DNA of 40,178 nucleotides from Octopus bimaculoides (lineage: Eukaryota): contig NC_068996.1 of assembly GCF_001194135.2 (NCBI RefSeq), positions 26,650,872 to 26,691,049 on the forward strand. Reading direction: 5' to 3'. The notes below the pieces were generated by a model. That model worked only from the letters and a program-made list of their open reading frames with translations, was not told the DNA's origin and searched no databases. Made by a program: the position numbers and the translations under genes. Shown here piece by piece: positions 3,136 through 40,178 of this stretch (position 1 is its first letter; the number at the start of each line of letters is the position of its first letter).

Positions 3136-3232
<97 letters not shown>

Positions 3233-6676: not shown

Positions 6677-6794
6677 ATGGCGATGAGTTTCGATGGCATG
6701 AATGGGTCAGATATGGACACATCCGACTCCCGAAAAAGACCCTCAGACGCCGAAAGTGATAGCGGGGTGACGAAGCGCTCAAACCAAGGCGGAG
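6677..6794 (+). CDS. Nova: Nova/pasilla first coding exon (MAMSFDGMNGSDMDTSDSRKRPSDAESDSGVTKRSNQGG-G), NLS-bearing
   Basis: Strong Kozak context aagATGG with an in-frame stop upstream. DSRKRP...TKR matches the vertebrate NOVA1 N-terminus (DSRKRPLE...TKRTNTG). Phase-1 donor GAG|gttaga at 6795 is compatible with the KH1 exon. Confidence 0.9.
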
Positions 6795-9700
6795 GTTAGA
6801 TACATTTTGAATATCCTTTTGGTTTTTTTCTTTTTTTTACCATTTTATTTTCTCCATTTTTATGTCTTTTTTTTCTTGCATCCTTCCGAAACGGCAATTT
6901 CTATTTCACTCATATCTCTCTCTCTCGGTCTCTCCACCTTCTACGTAATATATATATATATTCAGTTGACGACTATATATATATATATATATATGCATAT
7001 GCGTGTGTATGTATTTATGTGTGTGTGTGCCTCCTCAATTAGCATTATTCCTTCGTTTCAACTTGATTTTTTTTCTTTTTAAATCTATGGGTTTTCTTTT
7101 ATACGTTAGACTGGAAAACGCTATCGCTTGTCTTCTATCCCCCCTTTCATTCCGTTTCTTGCCTTTCTTTCTCTTCACCCCTCTCTCCACAGAACGTTCT
7201 CTATCAATCTATCCTCATTATAACATTTGGCATTCAAGTAAATCGTTATTGCTTACAATAATGACCACTTGTCCAAAGAAGTCGACCGACATGCAAGAAA
7301 TGGCAACCAAATCTTCCTCCTTATACTGCTGTCTGAATTACAATCAGAAAAAAAAGAGAGAAAAGGAGGGGGAGAACGTATTAGATAATGTAGTCCTAGT
7401 TACATCAGTACATAAATGATACACACACACACACACGCACACATAATGTTACACATGTATATTCTATATAAAATACGTACATTTTAAATATACTGGAAAT
7501 TGCATTTATTAAGATTAAAATATTGAGAAGTGTATATATATATATATATATACACACACATTCTATGCTTTTCACTGTCGCTATTCGGAGTTTCTTGCTA
7601 TACGTCCTTTCAGTTGACGACTAATATTAACTCCTTTTCCTATACGAATTTTATTCCCTTACATATCTCTATGTGTTATGTTTACACACACACACACACA
7701 CACACAGAGTATTGGTGTGTACTCCCACCATATTATATGTTTGAGACGGGATGGTCATGGTCGGTAGATCTTTTGAAACACATATTGAAAAGTCTTGATG
7801 GAGGAGGAGGGGGTGTTAATTATGTGAGTCGGTGAGGGGACTAAGCAACACCAACCACTTGTCCAAATAATTTGCGTGTCATACAATATACACACATATA
7901 TGTATATATGTGTGTGTGTGTCTATATATATAGAGATAGATAGATAAATAGATATGTATATATTATATACATATAGAGATATATATATCGAGTAAAAGTC
8001 GGCATCGGTTGAGAGGAAACCAACGATTGTTGGCAATATGGCCGACGCCACCATCAACTCCGACGACGTCGTTTACTGCTTTCACCAATGTTGTTGGCTG
8101 CTTAAACACTGCTGCTATATAAAACCTACTGCGTATAAGGCAGTATAAGATAGCAGCAAGGAGAATTTTAGTGTTTTTATTACTAATCATCTCCTTTCCT
8201 TTCTTTTTATATATATATATATTACATTATTTTTGATTTTGGTATATTTCCTACCTACCTCTCTCTATCTCTCTCACACATGAATAATTACTCTTGACTT
8301 TGCAAAAATACTCATTTTAACAATTTAATTTTTCTTACCCTTTTATTCACACCACCTTCTCATTCTTTTTCACCTTTGATATTGGAAATATCCCACTGGG
8401 TGTTTCTTTTTTTGTCGTTTTAGATTAGTTTCTTTCAGTGTTAATGAAAAATTAAGCCAACATAATGTGACGCTATTAACACATTGACGTGCATATTATG
8501 TGAATATGCGTATGTGTACACACACATACATATATATACATGTATGACACTACGGGCACATAAATGTAGATATATGATGTATATATATAATCACATCTAT
8601 ATGACAGTATTAATGCACAGTATGTGTGTATGTAATTCTGTGTATTTACATATGTATATCTAATATATATACAATCTAGTGGAATATTTCTAATTTTGAG
8701 TGCGTACATGTATATATAATAATTTCGATTTTTGATTTATGTACATACGCATGTAATTTCGATATGAAATTTTAATGTTTATACAAAATGTTTGTCGTAT
8801 GAATATTAAAATTTTATATAAAGTTAAAATTATGCATGTAGGTACAATTGTGCAATATTCATATACGTATTACTATATATTTGAAATATATCCAATATAT
8901 ATATACTTGTACAGTAAACGTTAAAGAATATTGGAATATCAAAAAAAAAAAAAAAGCGAAAAGAATGTATCTAAATGTCCTGTTATAAGTTAATTTTGTA
9001 AATTTTCATTATGAAAGAAGTGTGGTTGTCCTTCTTGGTATCCCGTACGGGACAGATAGAGATTAGTTTGTCATTCAAAAGTGTGTGTGTGTGTCATAGG
9101 ATGGTTGTTGGACCTTTTTGATAATTCTGACACAAGTAAAGCAATTCGTATTCTTGACTGGATTATTTAAAACCATTTGTTCTATATTTAAGATTTTGTT
9201 TTCTTTAATATCAATTAAATTTATATTTTCTGTGTGTGTATGTGTGTGTGTGAAATCCTTCAGATATATCAATGAACTAGATGGCTATGTTTTATGATCC
9301 TGAATTGACTTTTATATAACTACAGTCAATAGTTAAAAACCTCTCCATCTTTGCATTTTTATATCGGCTTGTGTGCCCCTCCCACCTTTACTCCAATCCC
9401 TTCCGAGATGTAATTGTTCATAGATCCACTCCACCCCCTAATTATTAAAGTTCTAAGCTATTAGTGCGTTCTCCCAATAAACCGAATACGTGTGTGCGCG
9501 CGCGCGTACGTGCACGTTCTCAATTCATTTTGAACAGTTCCTATAAATTAATTTCAGCTGTGAAATATAACGATCAAAAGAATAAAGGATATATATATAT
9601 ATATAAAATGCTTTTTTTTTTTAATGTAGAAGGGTTTTCAAATACAAAATATGCTCAGGAAAACGAAGGTTTATGATTTACTAAAGGAGAAAGTCGACAT

Positions 9701-9956
9701 TTTATCGAATTATAAATGTACGATGAACATGTATCGTTTTAGAGCCGATATTTTATGGCAATCTTTAGAAGATGGTATTTCAGCGACATGCAAGAGAAGA
9801 AAAGAAAGAAGAAAAAACCCCTCATTCTGATATCTCGTTCTGAATATTACGTATGACAGGCAGAACTATATATAGCAATGAATTCGGAGTACGCGATTCA
9901 GACAGCCTGAAGGTGGGAGCCGACATCACTTCGCATTGCGCAAAAAAAAAAAAAAA

Positions 9957-10020
9957 ATGACTCGACTCGACCTACATACTTCCGTCTATAATATTGAAGA
10001 CAACAACCTTTTCGATAGAT
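9957..10020 (+). CDS. Candidate alternative first exon of Nova (MTRLDLHTSVYNIEDNNLFDR-), no NLS
   Basis: aaaATG start, open to a phase-1 donor GAT|gtgagc (good intron side, weak exon side), in a CpG-rich region. No transcript evidence. Confidence 0.3.
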
Positions 10021-10486
10021 GTGAGCTAGCAAGTTTTCCTGCATGGAGAGGTATTATCTTGCCTTCTTCGGAGTTAGGAAATTTGAGGTTTATAATTTTA
10101 TTACATACACACTTAGTGATTTTAATGGGTTTCTTTTGATTATCATCCTCTTTAGTGCTGGTTGGATTGGATGGATAGCTAAACAGATAGCTAGGTAGAT
10201 AAATGATCGCAAATGTATGTAGGACTTGTGTGGCCACGTCGTAACAAGAGCAACACCCACTGACACAGCTAACGTGATGTCTAGCTATCACTTGTAGACA
10301 TTTCTTTGCTAATGCGGACACGTGTCAATTAATATCAAGTTTTCTTTTTAATAATTTTGTATTATATTTGGATGTTGAGACATTTTGCTCTCTACCTTCT
10401 TTAAGTCGAACTATATATATATATATTTAACCGATTGGTATTGTATTGCTGCTTCGTCTGTTGATCATGTCAGAACAAGTATAACG

Positions 10487-10532
10487 ATGGCTACGTATGG
10501 CACATCTGATATATCTACACCCGAACTACCAG
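10487..10532 (+). CDS. Candidate alternative first exon of Nova (MATYGTSDISTPELP-G), no NLS
   Basis: Strong Kozak context acgATGG, 15 codons plus 1 nt, and a phase-1 donor CAG|gtatct that matches downstream exons. Reverse CCAAT (attgg) at 10434-10438. Confidence 0.5.
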
Positions 10533-10578
10533 GTATCTGATATCTACCTCTCTACATCGCCCCTCCCTTATTTGTCTC

Positions 10579-10580
<2 letters not shown>

Positions 10581-10617
<37 letters not shown>

Positions 10618-10660
10618 TATATATATCCTATATATATCCTATATATATCCTATATATATA
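10581..10660. repeat. (TA)n followed by an 11-bp minisatellite (cctatatatat)x4 running into a gap
   Basis: Units start at 10616, 10627, 10638 and 10649. Confidence 0.95.
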
Positions 10661-23810: not shown

Positions 23811-24858
23811 AGGAGACATATTAAAAGTAGTATAATTTATTACACAATTAAATTTGACTAAGTTTGTAAACTGTCAGGTGAAATTTAATGGCTTGGTCAA
23901 AAAGAAACATGTATTGTTATTGGTCAAGAGAGTTCCAGCTGTTATCACCTTGTCTTTATATGTCAAGGACTCCATTCCCCAGGTGTAGGCTCTCTTGATA
24001 TGTTTGCAAAATTGTGATATACAACATGAATAAAACTAATTTTAAAAGACCTGAATAGGCAAGTGTACTACACTTAGTCTGCAAACCTTTTTTTCTCTTA
24101 TTTTGCAAAATTTGACTCTTGTTTGAAAGTAACCTTTGGGTGTAATGTTGGAAAGAAGTCCCCATATTTTGGTTAGCTATTATTAGATTGAAAATAATTC
24201 TGTTAAAATGAACAGTAGTTGCAACAAACATTTTTGTAAGCATTTTAACTAAGATTTGTGTCTTGTTGGTTTGAAGAAGTAATCCTCAACTAGCATGTTC
24301 AATTGAATAACTTTTCTCAGTTTTATTCATTTAACATGAAGATGTTAGAATTAAAAATTGTGTTAAGACCTATCATGAAACTGATTCTGAACAAATATGA
24401 ACTAAATCAGTCTATTTACTAATTGCTTCACTGAAGATTCCAATAAATAATTGAAAGATGGTTTAGCTATGATCAAATTAGATTGAATTGGCAGTTATTA
24501 ATGTTAGATAGAATGCTCTGGCTTCAAATACCACTGAGGTCAATTTTCATGTTTTTGAGGATTGGATTGACAGAATTGTTACTCAAATGAGATTCTTTTT
24601 GGTTGCAATGTGTGTTTTGACTCTGTATTTTGATTTCAAATCCAACTCCTCACTGGAAAAATGGTGATAGCTCTTTCAGGACTTGTGACCATAATATTGT
24701 GTCAGCAATTTGAAAACCAGAACTGCTTAAACCATCTGTGGTCATGTTGCCAAAGCGACAAATACCACCATAAACTGCTTGTTTGTTAATAGTTACAAGT
24801 TAGATAAACACTTATATATCAACAAATTGTTTACTTTGCTAGTATACAACTAGTATTC

Positions 24859-24934
24859 NNNNNNNNNNNNNNNNNNNNNNNNNNNNNNNNNNNNNNNNNN
24901 NNNNNNNNNNNNNNNNNNNNNNNNNNNNNNNNNN
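24859..24934. other. Assembly gap (N run)
   Basis: 76 N. Confidence 1.
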
Positions 24935-25681
24935 TCTTTCATGGAAAGTGTTCTACCATTTTTCTTAAGCTAACTCTGAATTTGAATAATCTTTGAATGC
25001 AGTAAATAAAAGAAATGCTACAAGTATATCAATGTAGTTGACTTGGAAATGAGTACTCCAGTGTCTGTCTAATAATGTTAACTGGTACAGTGTGAACAAT
25101 TTCCAGAAAGTATAACATTAAATCTTTAAAAAGTATTTACGTTTCAAATTTTCAAAAGGCATTGGACTCGGTTACTTGTCTTCGTGATTCAAAATCATTA
25201 TTCCAAACAATAAAGGGAAAATTCATTGGTACTTAGGGTCAGCAGAAAATATGATTGACAAATTGGACCAAATAAGTGCATTGTTTGTTATACTTCTAGT
25301 AAGCTTTTCATGTAAATTTTTGCCTATAATAATCTACTGAAAATATCTGAATAACAAATAGCCAGAATGAGTAGCCTAACTACACCTCTGAAACTACTTA
25401 TGTGATCTATCATGTAAACAAATATATTTAAATGATTTACATTTCAGTTTTGAGACTAACATTCTATAATTGTTTTATGGAGATGATCTAAATTCATAGT
25501 TATTTTAGAATTTTGAAACAAAATGTAGTAATGAAAGAGTTAAAGAAGTTTAAAAATACTTATTACAAATAAGGATTTTTTAAACTTTGAGATTTTATAT
25601 TATCCATAAGATTTTCTTGCTGGTCCTTTGTGGTCAGTTTTCTGTTTAATTTCCTGCTGAACTAGCAGAATTTTTAGTGAC

Positions 25682-25870
25682 AGAACAAAATGCCTCATGG
25701 TATTTCTTTTGGCTCTTATATATTCTGAGTTCATATCCCACCATGATCAACTTTGCCTTTCATCCTTTCAGGGTTGACAAAATAAGAGTGCCAGTCAAAT
25801 ATTGAGATTGGACTGCATCGACTGACTCCTTTCTCCTAATATTGCTGGCATTGTTCTTTAATTAGAAACA
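25682..25870 (+). mobile_element. Decayed SINE with a ctttgcctttcatcctttc.ggg.t.ga.aaaataag core (resembles the MESC/Meta central domain, from memory)
   Basis: Core motif at about 25750-25795. Related fragments lie at 38450-38570 and about 24510-24570. Confidence 0.6.
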
Positions 25871-26236
25871 TCTTATGAAAACATGAGCAGAGGTCACAGT
25901 GTGGAAGAAATAAGTGGTTTGAGACAATTGGGGTTGTATGTGAGATAGGGAGGTGTTTACAGATGTTTTAAATTATTTAAAACATTGAATAACTGACTTT
26001 TTTTAAAAGTACCTTTTGGTGGAGTTTTTTTTCTTTTTTTTTTAAAGTAAAAAGAAGTGATTCTGAAGGTTGGTAAGTCTTCCAACCTGTATTAGTTGAC
26101 AGTCCTTAAGTAAATATTGTGTGGAATTGATTGTTGAAAGACAAATGTGTATCTAGGCTTAAACAATTTCACGAGTGTAGTATGTTAGAAATTTATTTCA
26201 AATGAACAAATGAAGATATTTTAAGTAGTTATTAGG

Positions 26237-26267
<31 letters not shown>

Positions 26268-29200
26268 TTCCTACAGAGTTTAGTGTACTAATTCAGCAAA
26301 ATTAATTTTTAGCATGTTTAAAAGATTAAGTTGAAATAAGTAAACATTGAAAATATTAGATTGTCATCTTCAAGTACTATTATTCTCTATGAACATATTT
26401 TTGAGTTAGGACTAAGCTTTTGATACCTTTTATTTGTAAATATTGTTACTATTTTTAAGAATAGCATAAAGGCATAAGTAGCTCACAAATACCACCCTTC
26501 AACCCCTTTTATAGTGAATTTTTTTGTGCCACTCCTTAATACGAAAAAACAAAATAGTTTGCTTCCACAAAATTCTTCTTTCTTCACAGTATTTATAAAA
26601 TTAGAAGCCATCTTGATTTTATTAAACATGGCTATATGTTCACCTCTTTTCAGTCCTCAAAGGCCTCACCCACCTGAGAAACACTATACCAGATAATGAA
26701 AGAATGGGAGTGTAGACAATTAAAATGTTAATAGTCGTTTTGTTCATGGCATATTACTCTAGAAATAGTTTTATCTCAGCTATGCAGAGGGCATAAATCA
26801 CTCCTAATTTGACATTCACCAAAGACAAGCATTTTTGTTTTAGATATGAAGCATATCTTTTCTTTTATGAAACCAAGTCCTTTTCGCAACATAACAGTTT
26901 CATTCTAAAAAGTGGTGACCGCCTCCAGTTTTCTCTTCACACTATTTGAACAAATTTCTTTCAAAATTTTAGCACAATTTCTTGCTAAAATTATGTAGTG
27001 AGGCTTTATAAAGTAAAGGAAAAAGGAATCGACATATATTTCCCCTTTGTTGGAAGGAACTTAGCATAGTCTATGAAATATATGCATTGTTAGTATTATA
27101 TAAAAAATAGCTGGTAATAGTATTTTGTATATCTTGTGTATATGTGAAACTATGTGTATGTCTTAATTTGATTTGATAATTACTGCTGCATCTCATCATT
27201 TCATCCACTTTTACTTTTCAATGAGTTTATAATTTTTAAATTCTAAAATTTGTATAAGTAACTGAATTATATAAAATTTGATGATGACTGTAGTTTAAAT
27301 TCTGATCCTTCCATTAAACTATCAAAATAACTTTATATTGGTGCTGCTTCACACTTCTCACTCTTGTTATCTAGCTTATTTGCTTGATATATTGATTTGC
27401 TTTTATGAGTGAAAATGCTTGTCCCAAAGCTAATTAAAACCTGATACTTCAGTGTATAAAGTTTTGTTGGGATGCTAAGTTCTTGACAATTATATCCAGT
27501 GTCTAAGCGTAGTAGTACTATTTCCAAATATGGGGAACAATAGTTATTCCTTTCTCTAATTCCTCAACTATCAGCTGAATATAATTCTGACAGAGATAAT
27601 AAATTGAGATTAATTTCAAAACTTGATACCTGATGGTATCAATGAAAGAATTGAAAAATGATCAGAATTTTGCTGTCATCTGAACTTAGGATCAAACTAA
27701 TTATTTTATAATCGAATTCTTCATTTTTTTCTGATTTTTATAATTGTACCTGTATTTCAATTTGTCAAATTGTTCTTATGGCTTACAGCCTAATCACTCT
27801 TACTGCTCTTGCTTCTAAACTGTCCTGATTTTTTGCCATTTACTTATAGAAGTATGTATATTTAATTTTACTTAACAGTACTGTATAAATCTGATTACTT
27901 AACCATTTTATTCATGACCCAGTATTTTAAGAAGCTTCTATTTAGATTACACTGATAATACAGGTTATAATTTTTCTTTATGAACTTGTTGGTCGAGTTA
28001 ATGAAACAATGTCATCTAAACTACTTGTTTAGAGATGTTTGCAGCCTTGTAAGTTACACTGGGTTATGTGTAACGGTAATTCTAAACTTGGTTGAAAACA
28101 ATATTTTAATATATTTCTATTTCAATAAGAGTCCATATAAAAAGTCATCATTAAAGACAACAGCAGAGGCAAGAAGCAGGAGTGCAGCTGAAGCCAGTGT
28201 TAAACTGAATGGAAGAGAGAGCTCAGTGGACAGCAGGAGTGGTCCATATTAAAGGGAATTTAGAATGAAAAGCAGTGATGAGCAAGATATTCAGAATTGC
28301 AGACAGAGCTAACAGTCTATTTTCTAATAGATTTTTTTCATGATCAATATTTTCATTCAAGGAATATTGAATAGTATTTTTAGTAGAAAGTGATTATTTT
28401 CTAAAGATTAACATATCTCTAGGCTAACATTGCATTTTTTTTATATTATGAAAATATAGTCTTCAATTTTCATCCTTTGTAACTTAATACAAAACATCAG
28501 AAGCAGCACTCAAAAGTTCTTTTTATTTCTCTGGTTTATTTTTTCCTTTCTTGCTCACTGTAATATAATCCTTTGACATTGAAAAATCATTTGAGTTATA
28601 GAAATTAAATTTCTATAGGGCATCAACAAGATTCATTATTGCTGCCAAATTATGTAACAAAACCTGTCTAATTTTTCAAAATTAAACGAACAATTCAGAT
28701 TAAATCTTGGAACAAAGCTGAAAGAAACCAGTTCATATTAAAAGGAATGTTTTAGTCTCTTAAAGTTTGTTAGTTTCATACTAAATATGATCTGCACTGA
28801 TATAATATAATCATCCCATCTTTCCACCTCAAAAGAGCCCTAAAGGTTGTCTCTTCCTTCTTGGGATTTTTTGAATTTTTATTGACACCATTACTAATTG
28901 TTGCAGTGTATTCATGCTCACCATAATTTTAATAATGTTAAGTTGATAAATATGTCTCCAATCTAACACAGGGTTTTTCTGTAAGAGAATATCTTAGTGT
29001 TTAATATTTTATTAGATTTAGCTAGTGTGCTAATGACCACAGTTGTCGTTGGTTGTAGCACTTTCATAATCAAATTAAAATTCTCAACTGAAACCATGTT
29101 GTTATAAGACAGAATGAAAACTGCTTGAATTCTGGTTGTATTTCAAACATCAGTAAATAAAAAATTTAATACAAACCTCTGTAAAATACTTATTTTAAAA

Positions 29201-32200
29201 ATACATTGAAGCACATGAACAGTGTAATGTTGGAAGTAGAACAACAGAGCAGATGACAAAGACAGAAAAATGGGTTTGATATTGTTTGAAAATGATTAAT
29301 TACATGTAGTTTCCAAATTAAGTTAATGAAACACTATTGAAATGTGAGTGATATTCAGTATTAGTTTGTCATTGTAAATCATGAACTCTTATCAATTAAT
29401 ATTGTGTAGCCTCTGAACTTTATATTTGAGCATTTATTTGTTAAATGTTATTACAAAAATTGGTAGATTAGAAGACATTTGTTAACATAATGTGCTGCAT
29501 TGAAGCATCTGATGTTAGAAACATTTATAATCAATATATCTGCATAGTTATTATGCTAACAAAATTTTTTGATCTGAACTAAGAAATTGGTAAATTTTGT
29601 TTACATTACAAAAATGAAGAACTTGAAAAAGTATTTTGAGCAGAAGTAATTTTTTTTATATTTTGTAAATCTCTTAAATTCTTGGTTGTTGGTAACCTAG
29701 TTTTTAAAATCTTCAGATAACATGAAAGATGGTAACAAATTTAATGTACTTACTCTTCACTAATATTAAAAGATATGGAATTGTTTTGTAATTATGTAAT
29801 GTATTGGTAGTTGAGTTTTAAAAAACAATTTCATTTATATTTCATGTATTAAAAAAGAAAATATTGAATGTTCAATCAAATCCTAGTTACATCTTAACTA
29901 TTATAATTAGATGATTTGTTTTTAATTTTTTTAATGCAAAGAATAGTCCATTTGTATTTTTTTTTTTCTGTAAAAATGGTGTAGCCTTTTATATTTTACT
30001 GAATCTTTTTTTTTCTTCCATTCACACCCTTTATCTCAGAATTTTCAAATAACAGTAAAGTTTTTAGATAATGTAACAAAAACTTGATCATGTGAAATAT
30101 TTTTTAGTTTAAATTTTAGTTGAAAATTTGTAATTTATTGATTCTGTCAGGTTAGCCCTATAAAATCTAAGTGTCATTTTCTTCACATTATTGCTGAAAG
30201 AGAATGTCTTGAATTAATATTTCTGGTTAATGTAAACTGATGTTTAAAGAAATCATATTACTGCCCATCATTGCAGGAACTTCAATGTTTACAATGAAAA
30301 ATATCCTCATGAATCAAATAATGAATTACGAAACTGCTGAGATACTTAGCGTAAAGTTATGCTAGGCATTATAAAAGTACTATTCAGAAATGACAACCGG
30401 AAACGGACCTGTCTCTCTTTTGTGCCTCAACAGCACATATAATGTTGCTTACAGTGTTGGGCATTATTTTTTAAATTTCAAATGGAACCAAAAACAGCTC
30501 TTATTCATTATATATGTACACACATATACATGCAAGATCTTGCATAGAAAATTAATATCCACCCTACATTCTCTACTGGTTGCTACTTACTAAGTATGTA
30601 TAATTTTTGTAATGTGCCATATTTGGGTTTTAAGTAAGATTTCCATTTCATATTTCAGCTACCATATAGTTACTATCTAAAGGTTAGCAACATTAATTTT
30701 TCAGTATTAAAATAAATTTGGTAGCTGTAATTTTATAATTTCAGATACTATATTCAGGACATTCTCTATGAACTGTTGATATCCTGATACTAAATAGTTA
30801 TTACATTTAAATTTATTCTGCATTTGACCTAGTTGCTAATGCCATTGGATTACTTTCTCTTCTATTAATACTAGCTTATTGTTCTTGTATAGTGTAAGCT
30901 GTCTTATTGAGCTATGTCTGGTGCTAGTAAACAACTCTTGCTGACAAGCTACCTACCTGGCAAGCAAATAGGAATCAATAAAAGGTTTTTTTTTTTCTTG
31001 TAAATATATATGTTAATATATTCAAGTTATTTCTAAAATATTTGTGTGGAAGATTGATGCAATTATTTGTTGTAATTATATATTTGTTTTAATACAAACA
31101 TTAGGATTGATTTAAATAAGTTTAAACTATATTTATGATCTGTAAACTTATTAAAATTCATATTGATTTGATGGTGTATACGTGTGTATACACTACCTTT
31201 TGGAAGAAAAATTACCAGTAATTAATATTATACTTTTATATTCACAAGAAAATGCCTGTCAAAGTTAATTACCAACATAATTATGTTTAATGCTTGATTC
31301 ACTTCTTGGAGTATTAATAATTTAGCATGCAACCTTGATTCTTCATATCACATTTACATTGATTCCATAAACATATCTCAAAATATAATCGATTGGAGTC
31401 AAACCAATCTTGTCTCCTTTGGCAGTATAAATACAGTCACTAGGCATAGAAAGAAAACATACCTTACCCTCCTAAAATTTGAACAAAATGCATCAAGAAC
31501 CCTCAAGATAGATACTGATGCCAGGCCCCATTACTAAGAATTGCTGCTGTCAAAACGCTTTCAACACAGCAAAAACTTTATCTCTAAGGCGTTTTCTTCA
31601 GGGTTGGAAAATAAATTTAAATCAAGGCCTTTTTCAACAAAACTTAGGTGAGACCCACAACAAAATATTGCTTTCACATCTAGGTTAGTGCGGTGGTTAA
31701 ACATACATTCTAAATTGCATTGTAAAACAAAAAAAGGGGGGGTGCCTATTTGATTGGCATGAAGTTTTCCTCTGCCTTTTGTCACTACTACTTCAGTGAT
31801 CTCTGCACCTTTCGATTTGGCTTAATCTCATATTCGTCCATTTCAGGCACTTCCAACTTGTTCCTTGCTACTCCCTCCTGTCAATCACAGATCCTGCACT
31901 AACTACTACATCTTTCTTCCTAGAAATATTTCCATATCCTTGTTTTCCCTGCAGACATCAATTTACAACTGGGGGAGAAACATTAACTGCATTGACTTTG
32001 TCTTAGAGGTTGTGTGCTAATCATTGACTACTCACTTTTCCACACCAAAATAGGACCAAAAATAAAAGTCAATATTTTAAAAATCACAAACTGTTGCATT
32101 TAATTTAAGAGATCTGTGAACAATAAGTCTAGAATATGTTTGTTTTTAAATATTTCATTATGATAATGAATATAAATGGATTAGAAGTTAAATATACAAA

Positions 32201-32906
32201 ATGACTTCATCTGAATTTTCAGTGTTTACATTTAACAATTTTGATCTACTTAAAATCACAAGGTCATGACTTCTAAAGGATTACATTGAAAATATAACTT
32301 GCAATTAAGTTCATGTGTTACCAGAATCATGTGGTTTGTGCATTTAAGTTAAAACTTGCAAAAGTCAATGTCATCATATAAGATAAAACTTCATCAAACA
32401 GTGGTAACGAAACGATAAAAGAAATAAACTTACTCTAGTAATATATAACTACCCATTATTATGAAAACCATGTTTCATGCTTACATAAAAATATAGATTT
32501 TTAAAACAATAAATGAATTGAAATCTACATAGATCTTAACATTTGTTGATATGAAGATTCATGTTTAGGATCATTTCATTTCATCTCATTTGATATTTTC
32601 CTTTCTAGTTGTGTGCATATTTTCAAATCAAACTAGTTCATTGTTAGAAATATTTGATTTTTAATAAAACATTAAATATATTTGACAAATATTTCTATAA
32701 AATATTGAAATTTTTAGGAATTTTTTTTTTTTTTTAATCTTATAAATTAATTGAAATACTTTATACAAATTGCTAAAATATTGAATATTGATACTTTCAT
32801 GGTTTTCTGCCAGAACATTTGCTTTCTTCACTTTTCAAAATGTTTTTTTTTTTTAATGGTTGCTTGTATTGGTCTATTTAATGTTTTAAATATATATATA
32901 TATAAG

Positions 32907-32943
<37 letters not shown>

Positions 32944-33898
32944 ATTTTTTTTAGTATATTATCTAAATTCTAATATATTGAAATAGTAAAAATTGCTAAA
33001 TCATATCAGTACTTTATTAGAAAATGATTCTTTACAGCACTTAGAAATTCTTCCTTTGTGGATGGCAAACCATCAACTTTGATTGTAGTATTATTAGGGG
33101 GTCAGATATTGATGTTCCATACTGTTTATATTTCAACTAGTGTGGAAAGTGCACAACTTATATGTGGATAACTTGGGCTCTATTCAAAAAAGAGAGGAAA
33201 AAAATCTACTACAGCAATAGTGCCAATCAATTGCTTTAAGCCATCTTTCAGAGATGAATGAACAAAGATTTATAATAATTAATTTTAATTTGCTTTTAAG
33301 TTTCATTTAATTCTGTTTTTATTTATTCAATTTTCCTTTTCTCTTTTTTTCTGGCTCACCTTGGTACAACTCTGTGATGCCTGTTATATTAGATGAAATA
33401 CAGTAACCATGCTACTGCTGGTAATATAATTCTGAAAACTTCTGGCTTCAGTATCTTAGCAGTTAGCTTAGATATCTTTTAAAGTCTTCCATATAGAAGT
33501 TATATTTTAATTGTATATTATGAAGATACTTTGGTAGGAAAATGGGAATGGATTTAGGAAGTTATTGAAGCCAGTCTTTCTGAATTATTTTTTTTTATAT
33601 TACAATAATATTAGGAATGCTGCTGTTGAGTACCTATCTTGAGATTTGATTATAATAGCAGCAATATTCCTCACTTTATGCATAATCAAAATGCATAAAA
33701 TATCATTCATTTGAACTCTATTTACTTCTTTCTCTCTTCACTTTTCTTCTTACTCTTCCTCTCTCTTTTTTTTTTTTCTTAGTTGGTTCAAATTTCCATC
33801 TTCGACAGTTTTAATCCGGGTAACAATTTGTATCCAAATGATGCATAATAGTGTAGACATTTATAGAAACAAACATTTATAGATTTTATTTAAATTAG

Positions 33899-34045
33899 GC
33901 TGAAAGTTCCACTCAATGGTATCTTGATAGGTATTGAAAGTCAGGTCTGGGCACCCTCATATGCATACGAAGATTGTCAACCCGGGGACGAACCGTTGAG
34001 ACATAATATGATGGCTTCTCTTCAAATTTGGCACAAAAACCAAGG
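33899..34045 (+). other. Candidate Nova exon: either a 147-nt poison cassette exon or an alternative first exon with CDS 33961-34045 (MHTKIVNPGDEPLRHNMMASLQIWHKNQ-G)
   Basis: Consensus phase-1 donor AAG|gtgagc at 34046. The frame is open from ATG 33961 (also ATGATG at 34009-34014). Local CpG cluster in a CpG-poor intron. Upstream acceptor ttttatttaaattag|GC is followed at once by an in-frame TGA. Confidence 0.45.
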
Positions 34046-36816
34046 TGAGCCATGAATGCATTGCTTTGATTTTTCCCATAGCCAAATTTTTCATTTGTTC
34101 TCATTACAATATCTGTCAGGAGAATGATGTCACTTGCCAAATTTAGCATAATTCTATTTTGTGAACGAGTGGATAAAACATGCATGTCTTAAATAACTTT
34201 TTAAAAAATGGTAAAAATCAAACATATCCATGCTTTTTGTTTGTGTCTAACATTAAAGTTTCAGGTGGCTGACTCTGGACATCACTGTTACTTTTGTCCT
34301 TTTCCCTTCGGTGTCCATTTATTTCCATGCAAAATTTTGCCTGGCTTGATTGGAAATTTGCAATTATCATTTTTTCAAGGCATTTATGTAATGAGATTTC
34401 AGAAAAACTTTTAATGCTTTAAGCCCTTGCCTAGCCTTCCTCTTTAGTGGCTATTAGATTCTTTATTTCTCAAATTGACAGCACCATCCTTATACATTTA
34501 TGGCCATTGCTTGTTGCACACCTGTAATCTAATTTTTTTTTTCATTCGAAAGTTACAGTATTGTATTCTAGATTTAGTATTCCTTTTCTGTATTTACTAA
34601 CAAATTTTATTTTTCCTTATATATATTCATTAGTTTACTTAATTTTACACCAGATACACTTTTAATTTTATCATATATAGTTTAGATGGTTTTGAACCGC
34701 TTCTATAAAATGATAGCAGTATGTGCAAGTTCCAGTGTTTGTAAGTGTTCATTTAAGTAGATATCCTTAGCAGTGAGTGTTGAAACCTTCAAAACTTAGG
34801 GCAAGCCATAAATAACTAATGAATACGTTGATTCCAGCGTCTCCCCACAAGCCTAAGGCTATTTATTTTTAATGATATTGGGTTTCACACATTCTATGTA
34901 ACTGAAAAATTTTCTCAGGATAATCACTGGATCTTAATGTAACATATTTTGCTTTATGACAAATGTAATTAAAATATACGAGAATAGTTGTGAAGCACTT
35001 GTTTTATGGAATAAAAATAATGTACAATTACAAAGATGTGATAGGAAAGATTTGCTTGTGAATCTTGTTTCCACTATTAAAAACCAAAGAATAACTTCTA
35101 TCACAAACAAACAAACAAATGGTATGGTCCTTAGTCCATGCTTGCAACACATTCAGAAATTGAGTTTTGAATCACCATGTTAAAATTTAAAAAATCAAAA
35201 GCATCATCTTCCAATAGTTGAAAAAAGTAGGTTTGTGTACGGAGTAATAAAATATTCCATAATTGATTTCTGCATTTATGTGACTGCCTGACATATGCTA
35301 CACTGCAATAAGAATATATGCTCCATAAAATTGGGAAACCAAAGTTTATACACACACAGACATACATGTCACTGGCTATAGTAGTTTTTCAATTGCCCTA
35401 ATGCCCAAGAATGGCATATGCAGGCAAAAATATCAAAATCAATATTTCAAATGTACTGAAAATAGGAAGAAATAGCTTACAAAATTACAAATGATGGTGA
35501 GAGATGGTACCAGTGAGAAATTTTTATTACTTTATCTTTTCAAAAAAATTCCTCTCCCCCACTTTTTTTTCCCTAGCAGTTGTTAATAAATTTATGGATA
35601 GACAAAAGTTTATAACTGAGGTGTTTTATTAGTTCGTTTATTTAAAAAGATCTCCCTTGGCATATATTTCACAAAGACTTATTTTATTTTTTAAAGGTAC
35701 ATGTGTAGGCATTATTAGTTGATCACTTTAGACTGCTGAAAAATGGCAAGATCTGATTGAATATCTATTTAGAATGTTCCACTAGTTTCCAGTTTACAAC
35801 ATTTTCATTTATTTTTACTAACAGAGACCTGGACTACATTTTCTTTTTAACATTTAGCAACCATGGCAGTCTTTTGATCTTCCTCTCCCTTTCTTATTTT
35901 TTTTAAGTTTATAAAAATGTAGCTCAGAAAAATGAAAAAAATTATTCCTTGATCTTGGTTCTCATAAATACGAGTTCTGAATTTTCTTTTTAAACAATTT
36001 TATATTTCATTAATCGAAATTGACTTTGTCTCACATTTCTTTTCTGTACTCAAATGCAACTAATATAAAATAATTCAACATTAAAAAATAAGCTATTTAT
36101 ATAACATTTGCTGTGGTTTTGAACATATATAATGCATATATATGTTATATATATTGTATATATTATGTATATTTTATATATTGTATACATTATATATATA
36201 TTTTGTATTAACTGTTTTTGCAAAATCTCATTGCCTAATACTAATTTGGATTTTTTTTTTCTATTAAAAGCTGAACTTATTTCAATTTATTTTAAATGAC
36301 TATTATTTATTTTAATCAAGGAACATTTTTATGTTTTTCTATTACTATATTAGGATTTACTACATCAACTGTGGCTACAAATTAAAATTATATGCCATTG
36401 TAGTAAATAATTTTAAAAATGTTTTACTTTTAGTATTGAGTGATTATATATTTAACTCATCTGAACGTTATAACCAGTATTTTTCTTGTGTAGGTGGGGT
36501 AAGTCATTTTGGCAAATCTACTCCTTTCCAAACAATACCCATTTAAGCTTACTATTTTGCAAGTTACTAATTTTGGTATATAGCAAGTTGATATTGACAC
36601 CATATAAATTAACCAATTTTTGGTTGATAGCCAAGTATCTTTGCTTCACCCACAGTTTCTATCTTAACAATAAAAAAAGAAAATCACTTTCCTGGCTTAT
36701 GAATAAATATATATGTATATGTCTGCACTCTTTCTGATTGCAGTGTAAGTACTAAATAAGCAGAACATGTCCACAAAGGGAGCCCAGCATTTTTTTTTTT
36801 TTTTCATTTGTTTGTT

Positions 36817-36990
36817 CAGGTATGACTGCATGGTGCAGAAGCTTGCTTCTCAACCACATGATTTTGAGTTCAGTCTCACTGTGAGGCACTTTAGGCAAGT
36901 GTTTACTAAAGCCCTTGGTTGGGCTAAGCCTTTTGAGTGGATTTCATAAATGGAAAAATGAAAGGAGCCTGTTGTTTGTGTATCCCAGTA
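36817..36990 (+). mobile_element. Near-full-length decayed tRNA-derived SINE
   Basis: cagg.atgactgcatgg (A-box-like), agcttgcttctcaaccacatg, gagttcagtctcac (B-box-like), ggcaagtgt and gagtggattt. Confidence 0.7.
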
Positions 36991-38449
36991 TTGACATTGT
37001 ATGATAATAGTAAATTTGGTGACAAAGGTCATCTACCTGTAGAAAATCTGCCCTTGCATTCTTTGACTCATGCAACTATGGAAAATTGGATTCCAAAATT
37101 GTCATTTTTGAAATTTTTAGCTGGTAAAGCAACTCAGTGGAGGCTCCTTCATAAATGTAAAACTAAAATTGTTAGTACAGGAGAGGGTTTTTTTTTTTTT
37201 TTTTTTACCTGAGATAGAAAAAAATTTACCCTTTTCAAGAATTCTCTATTTCAGAGAAAAGGTCCTTGTAAATCTCAGTTGACTAGTTTTCCTACTGGGT
37301 TTGGTTTTGCTATATAAATTAGCAAAGCTTAAAATTTGTGGTTGCTGACACTTGGGATAATATTCAGTCAGGTGTCTGGTATGTTCAAATGATAGAGTAA
37401 ACTACCTTTTAATATCAATTTGCTGATATCACCACAGAACCATTAAATTAATCATGGTATTTTCTATTAGTTATAATATTGCCATATTTTCAGAATATTT
37501 GTTAGTGCGTAGTATTTCACAGAGACTGATGTTGATGAACAAGTGGTTAGTGTCTTAACAATATCCACCTCTTTTCATATAGAAAGTCCATATCCTTGCT
37601 ATGGATAGTTTAGTTATTTGAGGATGTTTATTATTTATTCAAGCAATTGCATGAGTAAAAGCTGAGATTTTATGCCAATAATGTTAGTGCAATCTCTAAC
37701 CTACACACAACACGTTTTGATTCAAGCCTTTGCTGATGTGGCACGTTTCCCCCACCTTTGAATAGTGTTGTTTACAAATAATTGCTTGATTGTATTTCAC
37801 CTTCCTCTCTTTAGAGCCAAACTTCTTTGCATAAAGTTAAATTTCATTAAAGATTTTGATTTTTCTCAAAAGCCAAATGCCACTTTAGCATTGTATGGAA
37901 GAAAAGCCTTATGAAATTTAATAATTTATAAAACTGAAATCAATATAATGAATTTGGTGTTGCTACTTCTATTTTTATCATTGTGCCATTACTGATTTAC
38001 TACTACTTCATTTTTTTTAGTTTTGAAAAGTTTCCTGATAATTTCTGAATCATTTCTATTTTCCCTACTATATTATAGTAGTAGTACAGGAGAAATAAAA
38101 TACAGCTTTACTATTTTAACTTCCTGCATGTAAATATATGGAAGAATTCTGATAATTTACTTAATTCTTCCTTGAATTGGTCTCGGTTATTTTTGTCATG
38201 GTCTTTCAATTAATATACAAACAAGTATCATTAAAAACAAAATGATATACATTAGAGATACAGAGAGCCTATGTGGTAACTAGAATTACTACACACTTAC
38301 TAGACTACTAATGCCCTTTGGCTGACTACAAAATCATTAAAACTGTTACAAGCAAGGTGCACTGTTTTGTTTGACTGTTGGAGTGGGTTTCATTTCTAGT
38401 TAATATTAAAACTACCTGGGCAGTGGATTGACTGAATCTATTGAATGAT

Positions 38450-38570
38450 AGATAAAATACCTTGTGATATTTAATTACAGATGTTCAGATCATGCTGTTG
38501 TTAATTTTGTTCTTCATCCTTTCAGGGATGGTAAATTAAGTACCAGTGAGCTGCTATTAAATATAGTCAG
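38450..38570 (+). mobile_element. Decayed SINE fragment (same core as 25682-25870)
   Basis: ttcatcctttcagggatggtaaattaagtaccag. Confidence 0.55.
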
Positions 38571-39722
38571 CTATACAACTTCCTCTATATAAAATCTTTA
38601 AAAACTTAAAAACTCACTATTTGGAAGACAATCCAGTTGGAAACAATTCTAATAAAGACCAATTCATCCTGCTAGTTTTTTTTAAGTTTTTTTTTTTTTT
38701 ATCCTGGCATATTATACATAAAATAGTACTGCTAAATCATTTACTTGTCAGCCTGAAAATGTAATATTTAGTGTCTTTGTTCTGTCACACCATGTAGTGG
38801 AACAGCTGTACTTAAGCATTCAGTTAAACAAGCTATATAAATGCTCAATCTTTAACCTCAGCTACAAAACCAAGGTTAACTGTCCATTGTAACTGAAGCT
38901 GTCTACCCTGGCTATTATTTTATTATTCCCTTGGTTTAGATCATTTCTCTATATGTTTGGTGCTAAATCCCTTGCAAAGCATTCACTGCTTTCAACAGTT
39001 ATTGTGTGTGTATTAATAACTTTTTTGTGGTATCGTGTAAAGAAATTTAGGAATTCCTAAAGAAAAAGTTTAATTTCAAACTACTAGCTGTCGTTTTAGT
39101 TGAAGATATTTTCCCTTACTTATAACACAGCATAATGTCATTACTGTTTTTGCTCCATCATAATGTTTCTTTACACATTTTATAAAAACCCACATTCTGA
39201 AATACACCTTTGTTTTTTTTTGTTTTTTTGTTTTTTGTGAATTCTTTAGGCATATTTTACAAACATTCAGTTGGATTTTTAAAAAATTACTACTCAACAC
39301 ATTTACGTTTTGCTGTCTAAAGAAAAGAATTGTTAAATATTTCAGTCAATCTTGTCAGTATTAACTTGCATTTTATATTTTTACTATTAATGCTCAAGAA
39401 GTAGTTTATCCTTTTAATTAGTGAAGCTTGCAGTTACATTTTCTCTTTTCTATTTAATGTTTGAGTATTTTAAAATGACTACATTTTTTAACCATAAAAA
39501 TATTGTTTAAAAATTATGCAGTGTTTTTTCTTCTTTAAACAGTAATTTTTTTTTTTTTTTTTGTAAGCATTAAAAAAATGTTTCAAAGATGAATTACAGA
39601 TGTTATTAATGTAAAATTTTGTTAGTGTATTTTATTAAAGATAACTTGTTCATCTTTAGGGAGGTGGGATTCGATGAAATTTTAAGTAGAAATTATTAAA
39701 GGTAAATTAATTTTTATTACAG

Positions 39723-39863
39723 GGGAGAATGTCCACCTTAAGATTTTAGTTCCAAGTGCAGCTGCTGGAGCCATTATTGGCAAAGGTGGAGAAACAATTG
39801 CACAAGTGCAGAAAGATGCAGGAGCCAGAGTAAAGATGTCGAAAGCTAATGATCATTATCCTG
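39723..39863 (+). CDS. Nova: Nova/pasilla KH1 exon ([48 protein letters not shown])
   Basis: Type-I KH signature with an intact GKGG loop, closely similar to NOVA1 KH1 ([21 protein letters not shown]...KLSKSKDFYPG). Acceptor tttttattacag, donor CTG|gtaact, 141 nt, phase 1-1. The gene continues beyond the window. Confidence 0.97.

Positions 39864-40123: not shown

Positions 40124-40178
<55 letters not shown>
40124..40178 (+). repeat. (TG)n microsatellite truncated by the window end
   Basis: Directly visible. Confidence 0.98.

What the first reader, a model, noticed from the sequence alone, without database searches (positions are those of the whole stretch)
6677..39863. Putative Nova N-terminal switchboard: one NLS exon versus several NLS-less alternative starts feeding the same KH1 exon
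Seen: four ATG-initiated segments (6677, 9957, 10487, 33961/34009) each end in a phase-1 GT donor and splice in frame to 16035-16085 and/or 39723-39863. Only the first encodes RKR...KR. Established: Nova acts in nuclear splicing and in cytoplasmic mRNA regulation. I recall alternative first exons with and without an NLS in invertebrate chordate Nova (recalled, not verified). Inference: promoter choice could set nuclear versus cytoplasmic Nova in cephalopod neurons. This is the best candidate for an undescribed system in the window.
Basis: partly seen in the sequence, partly recalled or inferred. Interest (0 to 1): 0.72.

Follow-up and report, generated by a model that had tools for sequence, protein, structure and literature searches.

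The report
Octopus Nova gene: alternative first exons
This is the 5' end of an octopus Nova-1 splicing-factor gene, which uses several alternative first exons: one carries the conserved nuclear-import motif and one without it is shared with bivalves; public annotation already holds these isoforms and sea-squirt Nova is built the same way.

Summary
The window holds the 5' part of a Nova-1 gene, most likely from Octopus bimaculoides. E1 (6677-6794) carries the SRKRP...KR motif. A2 (9957-10050) and A3 (10487-10532) lack it. Each ends in a phase-1 GT donor and joins the 51-nt exon 16035-16085 in frame.

The fourth segment needs correcting. The frame from 33961 hits a stop. The usable ATGs are at 34008 and 34011, and they lie inside an in-frame 114-nt internal cassette exon (33931-34044), not a first exon.

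All of these N-termini already exist as RefSeq isoforms X1-X10 of O. sinensis Nova-1. A2 is ancient: a homologous MTxLDLH...W(R/K) start occurs in bivalve isoforms and in bivalve mRNA contigs. The Mactra genome has the same exon order, E1 then A2 then a cassette then KH1. A3 and the fifth exon were found only in Octopus species.

The nuclear-versus-cytoplasmic switch is untested. In Ciona, Nova has the same exon 1a (NLS) and 1b (no NLS) layout, yet the NLS-less form still drives splicing. Verdict: a real feature and a new member of a known kind. The assembly gaps do not affect it.

The parts
3822..3872 (+). The donor CAT|GTGAGT is at 3873. In O. vulgaris and O. sinensis it encodes MLNCKFKRKKGKKMNS. 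In the window the A-run differs by 2 nt, so ATG 3822 meets TGA and only ATG 3851 (MKKKMNS) or ATG 3863 (MNS) stays in phase 1.
   Evidence: RefSeq isoforms X3 and X8. tblastn against the window and L007. Sequence read. Alignment with O. vulgaris. Donor score 9.5. Not found in Argonauta.
6611..6794 (+). Canonical first exon E1. Bases 6611-6676 are conserved 5'UTR and 6677-6794 is coding, carrying the Nova-family SRKRP-x11-KR motif (the predicted NLS). The donor is in phase 1.
   Evidence: 94.8% identity to Argonauta over 6611-6800. The motif is present in most Nova/Pasilla proteins retrieved. It is homologous to the Ciona exon 1a peptide ESRKRPLEEPIELVDFKRE, which that paper calls a predicted NLS.
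9831..10050 (+). Alternative first exon A2. Bases 9831-9956 are a conserved 5' flank containing TATATATAG, and 9957-10050 codes for MTRLDLHTSVYNIEDNNLFDRCELASFPAWR. It has no NLS pattern. The phase-1 donor GAG|GTATTA is weak.
   Evidence: RefSeq isoforms X2 and X7. Homologous bivalve N-termini. A profile built only from bivalve peptides finds this ORF end to end, E = 7.7e-4 in a six-frame search of three loci. Same exon order in the Mactra genome. 78% DNA identity to Argonauta, where the ORF is broken.
10487..10532 (+). Alternative first-exon coding segment A3 (MATYGTSDISTPELP), with phase-1 donor CAG|GTATCT. Found only in the Octopus species sampled. It could be a separate start site or an alternative donor of the A2 transcription unit.
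   Evidence: RefSeq isoforms X5 and X9. Identical in O. vulgaris. Absent from Argonauta.
16035..16085 (+). 51-nt in-frame exon (G)TIGTPDDYSCEYKSDS. It is the common acceptor for all four first exons and is present in isoforms X1-X9.
   Evidence: 100% peptide identity and 93% DNA identity in Argonauta, with both splice sites conserved.
33931..34044 (+). 114-nt in-frame cassette exon GIESQVWAPSYAYEDCQPGDEPLRHNMMASLQIWHKNQ. It is included in X1-X5 and skipped in X6-X9.
   Evidence: Conserved in Argonauta (95% aa) and in a more distant cephalopod contig, L001 (79% aa, with only 3-nt indels). Donor score 12.5.
33767..34528 (.). Conserved block surrounding the 114-nt cassette exon. It is the longest conserved non-coding stretch of the big intron and presumably holds splicing-regulatory sequence.
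   Evidence: 83% identity over 778 nt to Argonauta. 87.6% over 307 nt to L001, where the rest of the intron does not align.
39723..39863 (+). First KH1 exon, (G)[46 protein letters not shown](G).
   Evidence: Pfam KH_1 E = 8e-10. 100% peptide identity in O. vulgaris, Argonauta and L001.
10661..11016 (.). Assembly gap in the intron 128 nt downstream of the A3 donor. It corresponds to only about 15 nt of TA-repeat sequence in O. vulgaris. The other gaps, 3979-4452 and 24859-24934, are also non-exonic.
   Evidence: Colinear blastn blocks either side of each gap against the gap-free locus L007.

Best explanation
The window is the 5' part of the Nova-1 (Pasilla-type) gene of an octopus, most likely O. 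bimaculoides.

Structure. Transcription starts at several alternative first exons, in the order A5 (3822-3872), E1 (to 6794), A2 (to 10050) and A3 (to 10532). Each has its own ATG and a phase-1 donor, and each splices to the same 51-nt exon (16035-16085). That exon is followed by an optional 114-nt in-frame cassette (33931-34044) and then the KH1 exon (39723-39863). The result is a set of Nova proteins with the same three KH domains and different N-termini.

Age of the parts. Two of the first exons are old. E1 carries the family-wide SRKRP...KR predicted NLS. A2 (MTxLDLH...FxxW[RK]) has no NLS pattern and is shared with bivalves in both peptide and exon order. A3 and A5 look young or incidental. 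The 'start' at 34008 is an internal ATG of the cassette exon, used only when the upstream exon supplies no in-frame ATG.

Most likely mechanism (inferred, not shown). Promoter choice sets where and when Nova is made and, at the same time, which N-terminal module it carries. The NLS-less forms probably differ in import efficiency or N-terminal regulation. They are probably not strictly cytoplasmic, because the equivalent Ciona isoform still works in nuclear splicing.
For: Shown here:
- Frames, phases and splice sites are as described.
- RefSeq O. sinensis isoforms X1-X10 carry exactly these N-termini and exon combinations.
- All the exons are present and colinear in O. vulgaris and O. sinensis.
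- E1, the 51-nt exon, the 114-nt exon and KH1 are 90-95% conserved in DNA, with intact splice sites, in Argonauta. Most of the intron aligns at 72-77% or not at all.
- A2-type starts occur in Ostrea, Saccostrea, Mercenaria, Mactra and Dreissena models. They also occur in Logan RNA-seq contigs of 2.3-2.6 kb with an uninterrupted 578-aa ORF, which means spliced mRNA.
- A profile built from bivalve peptides only picks the octopus A2 ORF as the top hit. The match runs end to end from the ATG to the splice junction, E = 7.7e-4.
- The Mactra genome has the E1 exon 490 nt upstream of the A2 exon, then a cassette, then KH1.

From the literature:
- Ciona Nova has exon 1a (NLS) and exon 1b (no NLS). Both are expressed, and deleting the N-terminus abolishes splicing activity in the minigene assay (PMC12445529).
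Against: - I found no direct octopus transcript evidence. Exact look-ups of X2, X7 and X9, and a search with A2 plus the 51-nt exon, returned nothing. Octopus usage therefore rests on RefSeq models whose read support I could not inspect.
- In Argonauta hians the A2 DNA is conserved but the ORF is broken: a 5-nt deletion after the ATG, TGA in place of AGA, and a 1-nt deletion at the donor. The A2 peptide is therefore dispensable in at least one octopod, or that assembly has errors.
- A3 and A5 are not conserved outside Octopus. The A5 reading frame differs between O. bimaculoides and O. vulgaris.
- The O. bimaculoides versus O. vulgaris comparison is too close to show constraint: 92% identity overall, and 17% of 100-nt windows are at least 98% identical.
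- No localisation data exist. E1 fails the strict bipartite NLS consensus, and all isoforms share a C-terminal KRAR patch.
Confidence: 0.6

Rival explanations
1. One reading: a localisation switch. E1 isoforms are nuclear splicing regulators. A2, A3 and X10 isoforms lack an NLS and stay in the cytoplasm or neurites to regulate mRNA transport, stability or translation. Promoter choice therefore sets nuclear versus cytoplasmic Nova.
For: Only E1 has the RKR-x11-KR pattern. The A2 peptide is conserved across cephalopods and bivalves, which argues for a protein-level function of the NLS-less N-terminus.
Against: The Ciona NLS-less MLN isoform promotes Agrin Z-exon inclusion in a minigene assay and rescues a Nova CRISPR phenotype, so lacking the N-terminal NLS does not prevent nuclear function there. 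E1 does not meet the strict bipartite consensus, and all isoforms carry KRAR near the C-terminus. No NES-like pattern is present in A2. No localisation data exist for any mollusc.
Confidence: 0.25
2. The alternative first exons exist mainly for transcriptional control, for example neural versus maternal or ubiquitous promoters. The short peptides they add are functionally neutral passengers.
For: A3 and A5 peptides are not conserved beyond Octopus, and the A5 frame shifts between congeners. In Argonauta the A2 promoter-like flank, including TATATATAG, and the exon DNA are conserved while the ORF is broken. In Ciona the two first exons differ in developmental expression. Other clades have unrelated NLS-less starts: MSELEARVFQ in heterobranch gastropods and MTCDLAMTSEVQYHDQGQ in spiders.
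Against: The A2 peptide is recognisably conserved end to end between octopus and bivalves, which neutral sequence would not be over that distance. In Ciona, deleting the N-terminus abolishes activity.
Confidence: 0.3
3. Part of the isoform set (A3, A5, X10) is annotation or transcriptional noise: rare cryptic start sites or partly processed transcripts turned into models by the annotation pipeline. On this reading only E1 and A2 are biologically used.
For: The intron offers about 29 chance ATG-to-phase-1-donor segments. A3 and A5 lack conservation outside Octopus. The basic cluster of A5 is a translated A-run that is frame-shifted in the window. No independent transcript contigs were found.
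Against: The A5 and A3 donors and ATGs are conserved in the three Octopus species. Each appears in two RefSeq models, with and without the cassette. To my knowledge, which I did not check here, RefSeq builds alternative variants only from transcript alignments.
Confidence: 0.3

Closest known systems
Ciona robusta Nova, with alternative first exons 1a (MMM, predicted NLS) and 1b (MLN, no NLS) (PMC12445529)
   Same: There is a 5' first exon encoding the SRKRP...KR-type motif, and a more 3' first exon without it. Both join a common downstream exon ahead of KH1. The order on the gene is the same: NLS exon first.
   Different: Octopus has at least four first exons, plus a shared 51-nt exon and a 114-nt cassette before KH1. 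The NLS-less peptides are unrelated in sequence: MLNAMEYECQYNAGYS... in Ciona versus MTRLDLHTSVYN... in octopus. Expression and function were tested in Ciona and not in any mollusc.
RefSeq Nova-1 isoforms X1-X10 of Octopus sinensis (XP_029648569-73, XP_036367417-22)
   Same: The N-terminal peptides and exon combinations are identical to those encoded in the window. The locus is colinear.
   Different: The species differs: the window matches O. bimaculoides, whose own RefSeq and UniProt models show only the E1 start and read through the KH1 donor. In the window the long A5 ORF is interrupted.
Bivalve Nova/Pasilla isoforms starting MTLLDLHS... (Ostrea edulis X11, Saccostrea X7 and X9, Mercenaria X3, Mactra antiquata, Dreissena X15)
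   Same: The alternative first-exon peptide is homologous and ends at a phase-1 junction. The exon lies just downstream of the E1 exon in the genome. Spliced mRNA contigs exist.
   Different: Bivalve first exons join KH1 directly or through cassettes of their own (GTSDQLHQMMTEE..., NCHEYPEGEEM...). These show no detectable similarity to the octopus 51-nt or 114-nt exons.
Vertebrate NOVA1/NOVA2
   Same: They share the N-terminal SRKRP...KR motif followed by KH1. They also have an alternatively spliced, in-frame coding cassette within the gene (from memory: NOVA1 exon 4, 24 aa, autoregulated).
   Different: I know of no described vertebrate alternative first exon that removes the N-terminal NLS. 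This is from my own knowledge. The two literature searches I ran for Nova isoforms lacking the NLS turned up only the Ciona paper.

Membership tests
Nova/Pasilla family of KH-domain splicing regulators (gene 5' end) | A type-I KH domain with a GxxG loop immediately after the N-terminal region | tested here: met
   The exon 39723-39863 encodes ...[16 protein letters not shown].... Pfam KH_1 E = 8e-10, above the gathering score.
Nova/Pasilla family of KH-domain splicing regulators (gene 5' end) | Three KH domains, with full-length orthology to named Nova/Pasilla proteins | tested here: met
   The rest of the gene lies outside the window. The window's exons are identical to the N-termini of O. 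sinensis Nova-1 and O. bimaculoides models that carry KH1-KH3. The best non-cephalopod hits are mollusc Nova-1/Pasilla, with E down to 1e-262.
Nova/Pasilla family of KH-domain splicing regulators (gene 5' end) | Binding of YCAY clusters and regulation of alternative splicing | not testable with these tools
   This is a biochemical property. I only counted YCAY motifs.
Dual first-exon Nova architecture (exon 1a with NLS, exon 1b without), as described in Ciona | Mutually exclusive first exons, each with its own ATG and donor, joined in frame to a common downstream exon | tested here: met
   Lengths of 118, 94 and 46 nt all give phase 1, and the 51-nt exon is phase 1 to 1. RefSeq isoforms show each first exon joined to TIGTPDDY....
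Dual first-exon Nova architecture (exon 1a with NLS, exon 1b without), as described in Ciona | The 5' exon encodes the basic SRKRP...KR motif and the 3' exon or exons do not | tested here: met
   The pattern scan finds RKR-x11-KR only in E1. The order E1 then A2 holds in octopus and in Mactra.
Dual first-exon Nova architecture (exon 1a with NLS, exon 1b without), as described in Ciona | Both transcript classes are detected experimentally | tested here: inconclusive
   Spliced mRNA contigs with the A2-type start exist for a bivalve. For octopus there are only RefSeq models. Direct look-ups found no transcript contig.
Dual first-exon Nova architecture (exon 1a with NLS, exon 1b without), as described in Ciona | Sequence homology of the NLS-less exon to Ciona exon 1b | tested here: not met
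   The Ciona 1b peptide MLNAMEYECQYNAGYSIVSNGNEYGLIQAYTAH shows no evident similarity to A2 or A3 by eye. The A2 profile was run only against the retrieved mollusc and other proteins, where it hits only bivalve and octopus N-termini. The architectures are alike, but common origin of the 1b exons is not shown.
Classical bipartite nuclear localisation signal | Two basic residues, a 10-12 residue spacer, then at least 3 basic residues out of 5 | tested here: not met
   E1 has RKR, an 11-residue spacer, then only KR. It matches the Nova-family motif that authors call a predicted NLS, but not the strict consensus.
Poison (NMD-inducing) cassette exon of a splicing regulator (considered for 33931-34044) | Inclusion introduces a premature stop codon or a frameshift | tested here: not met
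   The true acceptor is at 33931. The exon is 114 nt, phase 1 to 1, with no stop. It is translated in RefSeq and Argonauta proteins, and its indels in L001 are multiples of 3.

The most novel reading that the evidence does not exclude
The paired first-exon layout of Nova is an ancient feature. It consists of a 5' exon with the SRKRP...KR import motif followed closely by a 3' exon with a different, NLS-less N-terminus. On this reading it is shared by molluscs (octopus and bivalves, with a conserved MTxLDLH...FxxW[RK] peptide) and tunicates, and is perhaps ancestral to bilaterians. The NLS-less N-terminus would be a functional module that changes Nova's nucleo-cytoplasmic partition or relieves autoinhibition, as the Ciona N-terminus does. 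In octopods the conserved MM start inside the 114-nt cassette would add a third N-terminal class, available to transcripts whose first exon is non-coding, as A2 appears to be in Argonauta.
Probability: 0.2. Interest if true: 0.6.

Novelty: new member of a known kind. Interest (0 to 1): 0.4.

Why it matters
Nova proteins are key neuronal splicing regulators that also act on cytoplasmic mRNAs. How a cell divides one gene's product between these roles is not settled.

This locus shows that a cephalopod, an animal with a large and independently evolved brain, has the same choice found in a sea squirt between a first exon with the NLS motif and one without it. One NLS-less N-terminus is conserved between cephalopods and bivalves. 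That makes the question testable in molluscs with defined exons, junctions and peptides. It also suggests the layout is old rather than a tunicate oddity.

The practical value is modest. The isoforms are already annotated, and the functional claim remains a hypothesis.

Tried and rejected
1. Poison-exon reading of the conserved island at about 33850-34140. An upstream AG at about 33905 would give a stop. I rejected this once the proteins showed the true acceptor at 33931 and an open 114-nt frame.

2. Homology of the octopus 51-nt and 114-nt exons with bivalve cassettes (GTSDQLHQMMTEE...; NCHEYPEGEEM...). Profiles built from the bivalve peptides found neither exon in six-frame searches.

3. Similarity of A2 to Ciona exon 1b, to the gastropod MSELEARVFQ start or to spider starts. 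None was detected.

4. A nuclear-export-like motif in A2. None matched a loose pattern.

5. Direct octopus transcript evidence.
- The third homology search, with A2 plus the 51-nt exon, found no candidate.
- Exact look-ups of X2, X7 and X9 found nothing.
- The homology tool appears to return only proteins of a length similar to the query. That is why the first search, with a 104-aa query, missed all full-length Nova proteins.

6. Using O. vulgaris to detect constraint. The species are too close: 92% identity, and 17% of 100-nt windows are at least 98% identical.

7. The basic cluster KFKRKKGKK of A5 as a second NLS. It is a translated A-run and is frame-shifted with a stop in the window.

8. 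YCAY enrichment just downstream of the 114-nt exon. There are 6 motifs per 200 nt, and 12% of windows reach that count, so it is not significant.

9. Rfam families in the window: none. Pfam domains in the variable N-terminal peptides or in the ORF at 724-1176: none.

Full report
WHAT IS IN THE SEQUENCE

The window carries the 5' part of a Nova gene. The segment 6677-6794 encodes MAMSFDGMNGSDMDTSDSRKRPSDAESDSGVTKRSNQGG and ends in a phase-1 donor (GAG|GTTAGA). The segment 39723-39863 encodes the first half of KH1, (G)[46 protein letters not shown](G) (Pfam KH_1 E = 8e-10).

The 51-nt segment 16035-16085 has a good acceptor (tttatttctag|) and donor (CAG|GTAGGT), and it keeps phase 1. The ATG at 9957 opens a 94-nt segment that ends at GAG|GTATTA. 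The ATG at 10487 opens a 46-nt segment that ends at CAG|GTATCT.

The fourth item needs correcting. The frame from 33961 stops at 33997-33999. The usable ATGs are 34008 and 34011 (MMASLQIWHKNQ), with donor AAG|GTGAGC at 34045.

GAPS

The three runs of N are 3979-4452, 10661-11016 and 24859-24934. All lie between exons. Against the gap-free O. vulgaris locus (L007), the flanks are colinear. The gaps correspond there to about 320 nt, about 15 nt (a TA repeat) and about 47 nt. No reading frame or splice site depends on them.

IS THE PATTERN MORE THAN CHANCE?

Not by itself. With a simple donor matrix, the intron 6795-39722 contains 29 ATG-initiated open segments of at least 10 codons that end in a phase-1 GT with a score of 4 or more. 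The true A2 donor scores only 2.9. The case therefore rests on outside evidence.

OUTSIDE EVIDENCE 1: ANNOTATED ISOFORMS

A full-length query was built from the window's exons plus the downstream exons of a related cephalopod contig. It retrieved octopus Nova proteins. The 90% cluster of the best hit holds ten RefSeq isoforms of O. sinensis Nova-1. Their N-termini are:

- E1 (X1, X4, X6).
- MTRLDLHTSVYNIEDNNLFDRCELASFPAWR|G, which is A2 (X2, X7).
- MATYGTSDISTPELP|G, which is A3 (X5, X9).
- MMASLQIWHKNQ|GENVHLK (X10).

Every first exon is joined to TIGTPDDYSCEYKSDS, the 51-nt exon. After that exon, GIESQVWAPSYAYEDCQPGDEPLRHNMMASLQIWHKNQ is either present (X1-X5) or absent (X6-X9).

This peptide is encoded by 33931-34044, a 114-nt exon with acceptor cttgatag|GTATTG. 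X10 simply starts at its internal ATG.

The window itself is O. bimaculoides or something very close. Its intron after KH1 translates to [17 protein letters not shown], exactly as in the read-through O. bimaculoides model XP_052829436.1. O. vulgaris differs at this point.

OUTSIDE EVIDENCE 2: CONSERVATION WITHIN CEPHALOPODS

I fetched the loci of O. vulgaris (L007), O. sinensis (L010) and Argonauta hians (L006), plus 10 kb upstream of KH1 in a more distant cephalopod contig (L001).

O. vulgaris is 92% identical overall, and 17% of 100-nt windows reach 98%. It confirms presence and colinearity of all the exons but cannot show constraint.

Argonauta is informative. E1 is 95% identical in DNA, the 51-nt exon 93%, the 114-nt exon lies in an 83% block of 778 nt, and KH1 is 90%. 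All have intact splice sites. The rest of the intron aligns at 72-77% in patches or not at all.

In L001 the only alignable island in 10 kb of intron is the 114-nt exon with its flanks (87.6% over 307 nt). Its two indels are 3 nt each, as expected for coding sequence.

A2 is conserved to Argonauta at 78% over 281 nt, including about 125 nt upstream with a TATATATAG box. However, the Argonauta ORF is broken. There is a 5-nt deletion right after the ATG, TGA in place of AGA, and a 1-nt deletion at the donor.

A3 and the fifth exon (window 3822-3872) are not found in Argonauta.

The fifth exon's basic cluster is a translated A-run. In the window the run is 2 nt longer, so ATG 3822 meets TGA, and only MKKKMNS or MNS remains in phase. 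It is therefore not a dependable second NLS.

OUTSIDE EVIDENCE 3: CONSERVATION BEYOND CEPHALOPODS

Among the retrieved mollusc proteins, many isoforms lack the E1 peptide. A whole group of bivalve isoforms starts with MTLLDLHSCLSNVDE.MT.SQEYMNFNVWKG or close variants. The group includes Ostrea, Saccostrea, Mercenaria, Mactra and Dreissena.

The same start is present in Logan RNA-seq contigs of 2.3-2.6 kb that carry an uninterrupted 578-aa ORF. These are spliced mRNA.

A profile built from six bivalve peptides only was searched against the six-frame translation of the window, L006 and L007 (232,000 residues). It ranks the octopus A2 ORF first. The alignment runs from the initiator Met to the junction residue, with E = 7.7e-4. 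The Argonauta remnant ranks third.

In the Mactra antiquata genome, the E1-type exon lies 490 nt upstream of the A2-type exon. A cassette exon and then KH1 follow. That is the same order as in the octopus.

Within the proteins in hand, the A2 profile recognises only bivalve and octopus N-termini. Heterobranch gastropods (MSELEARVFQ...) and spiders (MTCDLAMTSEVQYHDQGQ...) have other, unrelated NLS-less starts.

LITERATURE

In Ciona robusta, Nova has two first exons. Exon 1a encodes a predicted N-terminal NLS (MMM isoform...ESRKRPLEEPIELVDFKRE...). Exon 1b, which lies more 3', does not (MLN isoform). Both are expressed from the egg onwards (PMC12445529).

That paper also reports the following:

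- The NLS-less MLN form is the more widely expressed one.
- It promotes Agrin Z-exon inclusion in a minigene assay.
- It rescues a neural Nova CRISPR phenotype.
- Deleting the N-terminus abolishes activity unless KH3 is also deleted.

I found no paper on cephalopod or mollusc Nova isoforms in the held library.

HOW IT MOST LIKELY WORKS

Shown: this is a multi-promoter 5' end whose first exons all feed one small exon, followed by an optional in-frame cassette and then KH1. The result is one set of KH domains with several N-termini.

Inferred: promoter choice couples expression domain to N-terminal module. E1 provides the family's import motif. A2 provides an old alternative module of unknown activity.

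I rate a strict nuclear-versus-cytoplasmic switch as unlikely (about 0.25), for three reasons:

- The Ciona equivalent without the NLS works in nuclear splicing.
- E1 satisfies only a loose bipartite pattern (RKR-x11-KR).
- All isoforms retain KRAR near the C-terminus.

A quantitative shift in partition, or an effect on N-terminal regulation of the KH domains, fits the evidence better.

A3, A5 and X10 may be minor or lineage-specific products.

The 114-nt cassette has the strongest donor in the region and the longest conserved flanks. It is the best candidate for regulated splicing in this region. Its conserved internal MM codons would allow translation to start just before KH1 in transcripts whose first exon is non-coding, as A2 appears to be in Argonauta. 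That last point is speculation.

COMPARISON AND NOVELTY

In architecture this matches Ciona Nova exons 1a and 1b. In detail it matches what RefSeq already lists for O. sinensis.

What this analysis adds:

- The finding that one NLS-less first exon is homologous between cephalopods and bivalves and keeps its position next to E1.
- The observation that its ORF is broken in Argonauta.

I therefore classify it as a new member of a known kind, not an undescribed system. I score interest at 0.4.

Noticed in passing
window 6271-6640 (also L007 about 9680-9960; L006 about 9080-9400): The densest YCAY (Nova-binding motif) tract of the whole locus lies 40-400 nt upstream of the E1 start codon. It reaches 28 motifs per 200 nt, against a mean of 3.2 (sd 2.5). 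It is made of (ATC)n and (CTCA)n-type repeats. O. vulgaris has the same tract. Argonauta, where this sequence does not align, still has its locus maximum (19 per 200 nt) upstream of E1. It could be a plain microsatellite, or a Nova autoregulatory site in the 5'UTR or promoter.
   Followed up: partly
window 33767-34528: About 780 nt around the 114-nt cassette exon are conserved to Argonauta (83%) and, in part, to a more distant cephalopod (87.6% over 307 nt). The surrounding intron is not conserved. Five YCAY motifs lie within 90 nt downstream of the donor, and four of them are kept in L001. The count per 200 nt is not statistically unusual.
   Followed up: partly
L010 47605-47676; L007 44791-44862; L006 39013-39084 (downstream of the window): A 72-nt, 24-aa cassette exon (TIDLAAPTQFDRLQPSDSLEPFLQ) lies between the KH1 and KH2 exons. 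It is present in most O. sinensis isoforms, absent from X4, and conserved in Argonauta. From memory, vertebrate NOVA1 has an autoregulated 24-aa alternative exon at a similar position. I did not check this.
   Followed up: partly
proteins P0167/P0253-P0256 and P0214/P0257 (other loci): Octopus species have two further Nova paralogues. One starts MNASQSGGGGSMGSDEIYTCDYKSGDSSSGG... It has no SRKRP motif, but it carries a DEIYTCDYKSGDS stretch resembling the 51-nt exon peptide PDDYSCEYKSDS. Ciona exon 1b also contains EYECQYNAG. This is a short Y-x-C-x-Y-(K/N) resemblance that may be chance.
   Followed up: no
window 39864-39915 and beyond: The O. bimaculoides protein models (XP_014769033.1, XP_052829436.1, A0A0L8HVK4) read through the KH1 donor into the intron ([16 protein letters not shown]...). 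They also lack the next exon (TSERVCLITG...), which O. vulgaris has about 590 nt downstream. This looks like a mis-annotation in that assembly.
   Followed up: partly
L006 14660-14915: In Argonauta hians the A2 exon and its upstream flank are conserved as DNA, but the reading frame is destroyed by a 5-nt deletion, an in-frame TGA and a 1-nt deletion at the donor. Either the coding use of A2 was lost in this lineage or the assembly has errors.
   Followed up: partly
window 724-1176, minus strand: A 150-aa ORF (MEGCMVHVYEQQ...RLHWFGHVMCMDEG...) sits upstream of the gene. From memory it resembles the C-terminal tail of retrotransposon reverse-transcriptase ORFs, but it has no Pfam match.
   Followed up: partly
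proteins P0170-P0175, P0210-P0212, P0221, P0228-P0229: Other animal groups have NLS-less Nova/Pasilla starts of their own, conserved within the group: MSELEARVFQ in heterobranch gastropods and MT(C)DLAMTSEVQYHDQGQ in spiders. Replacing the NLS exon by an alternative first exon seems to recur across protostomes.
   Followed up: partly
window 40124-40178; 10575-10660; 3147-3229: There are long dinucleotide microsatellites: (GT)n at the window's end and (TA)n next to the gaps. These are the likely cause of the assembly gaps.
   Followed up: no
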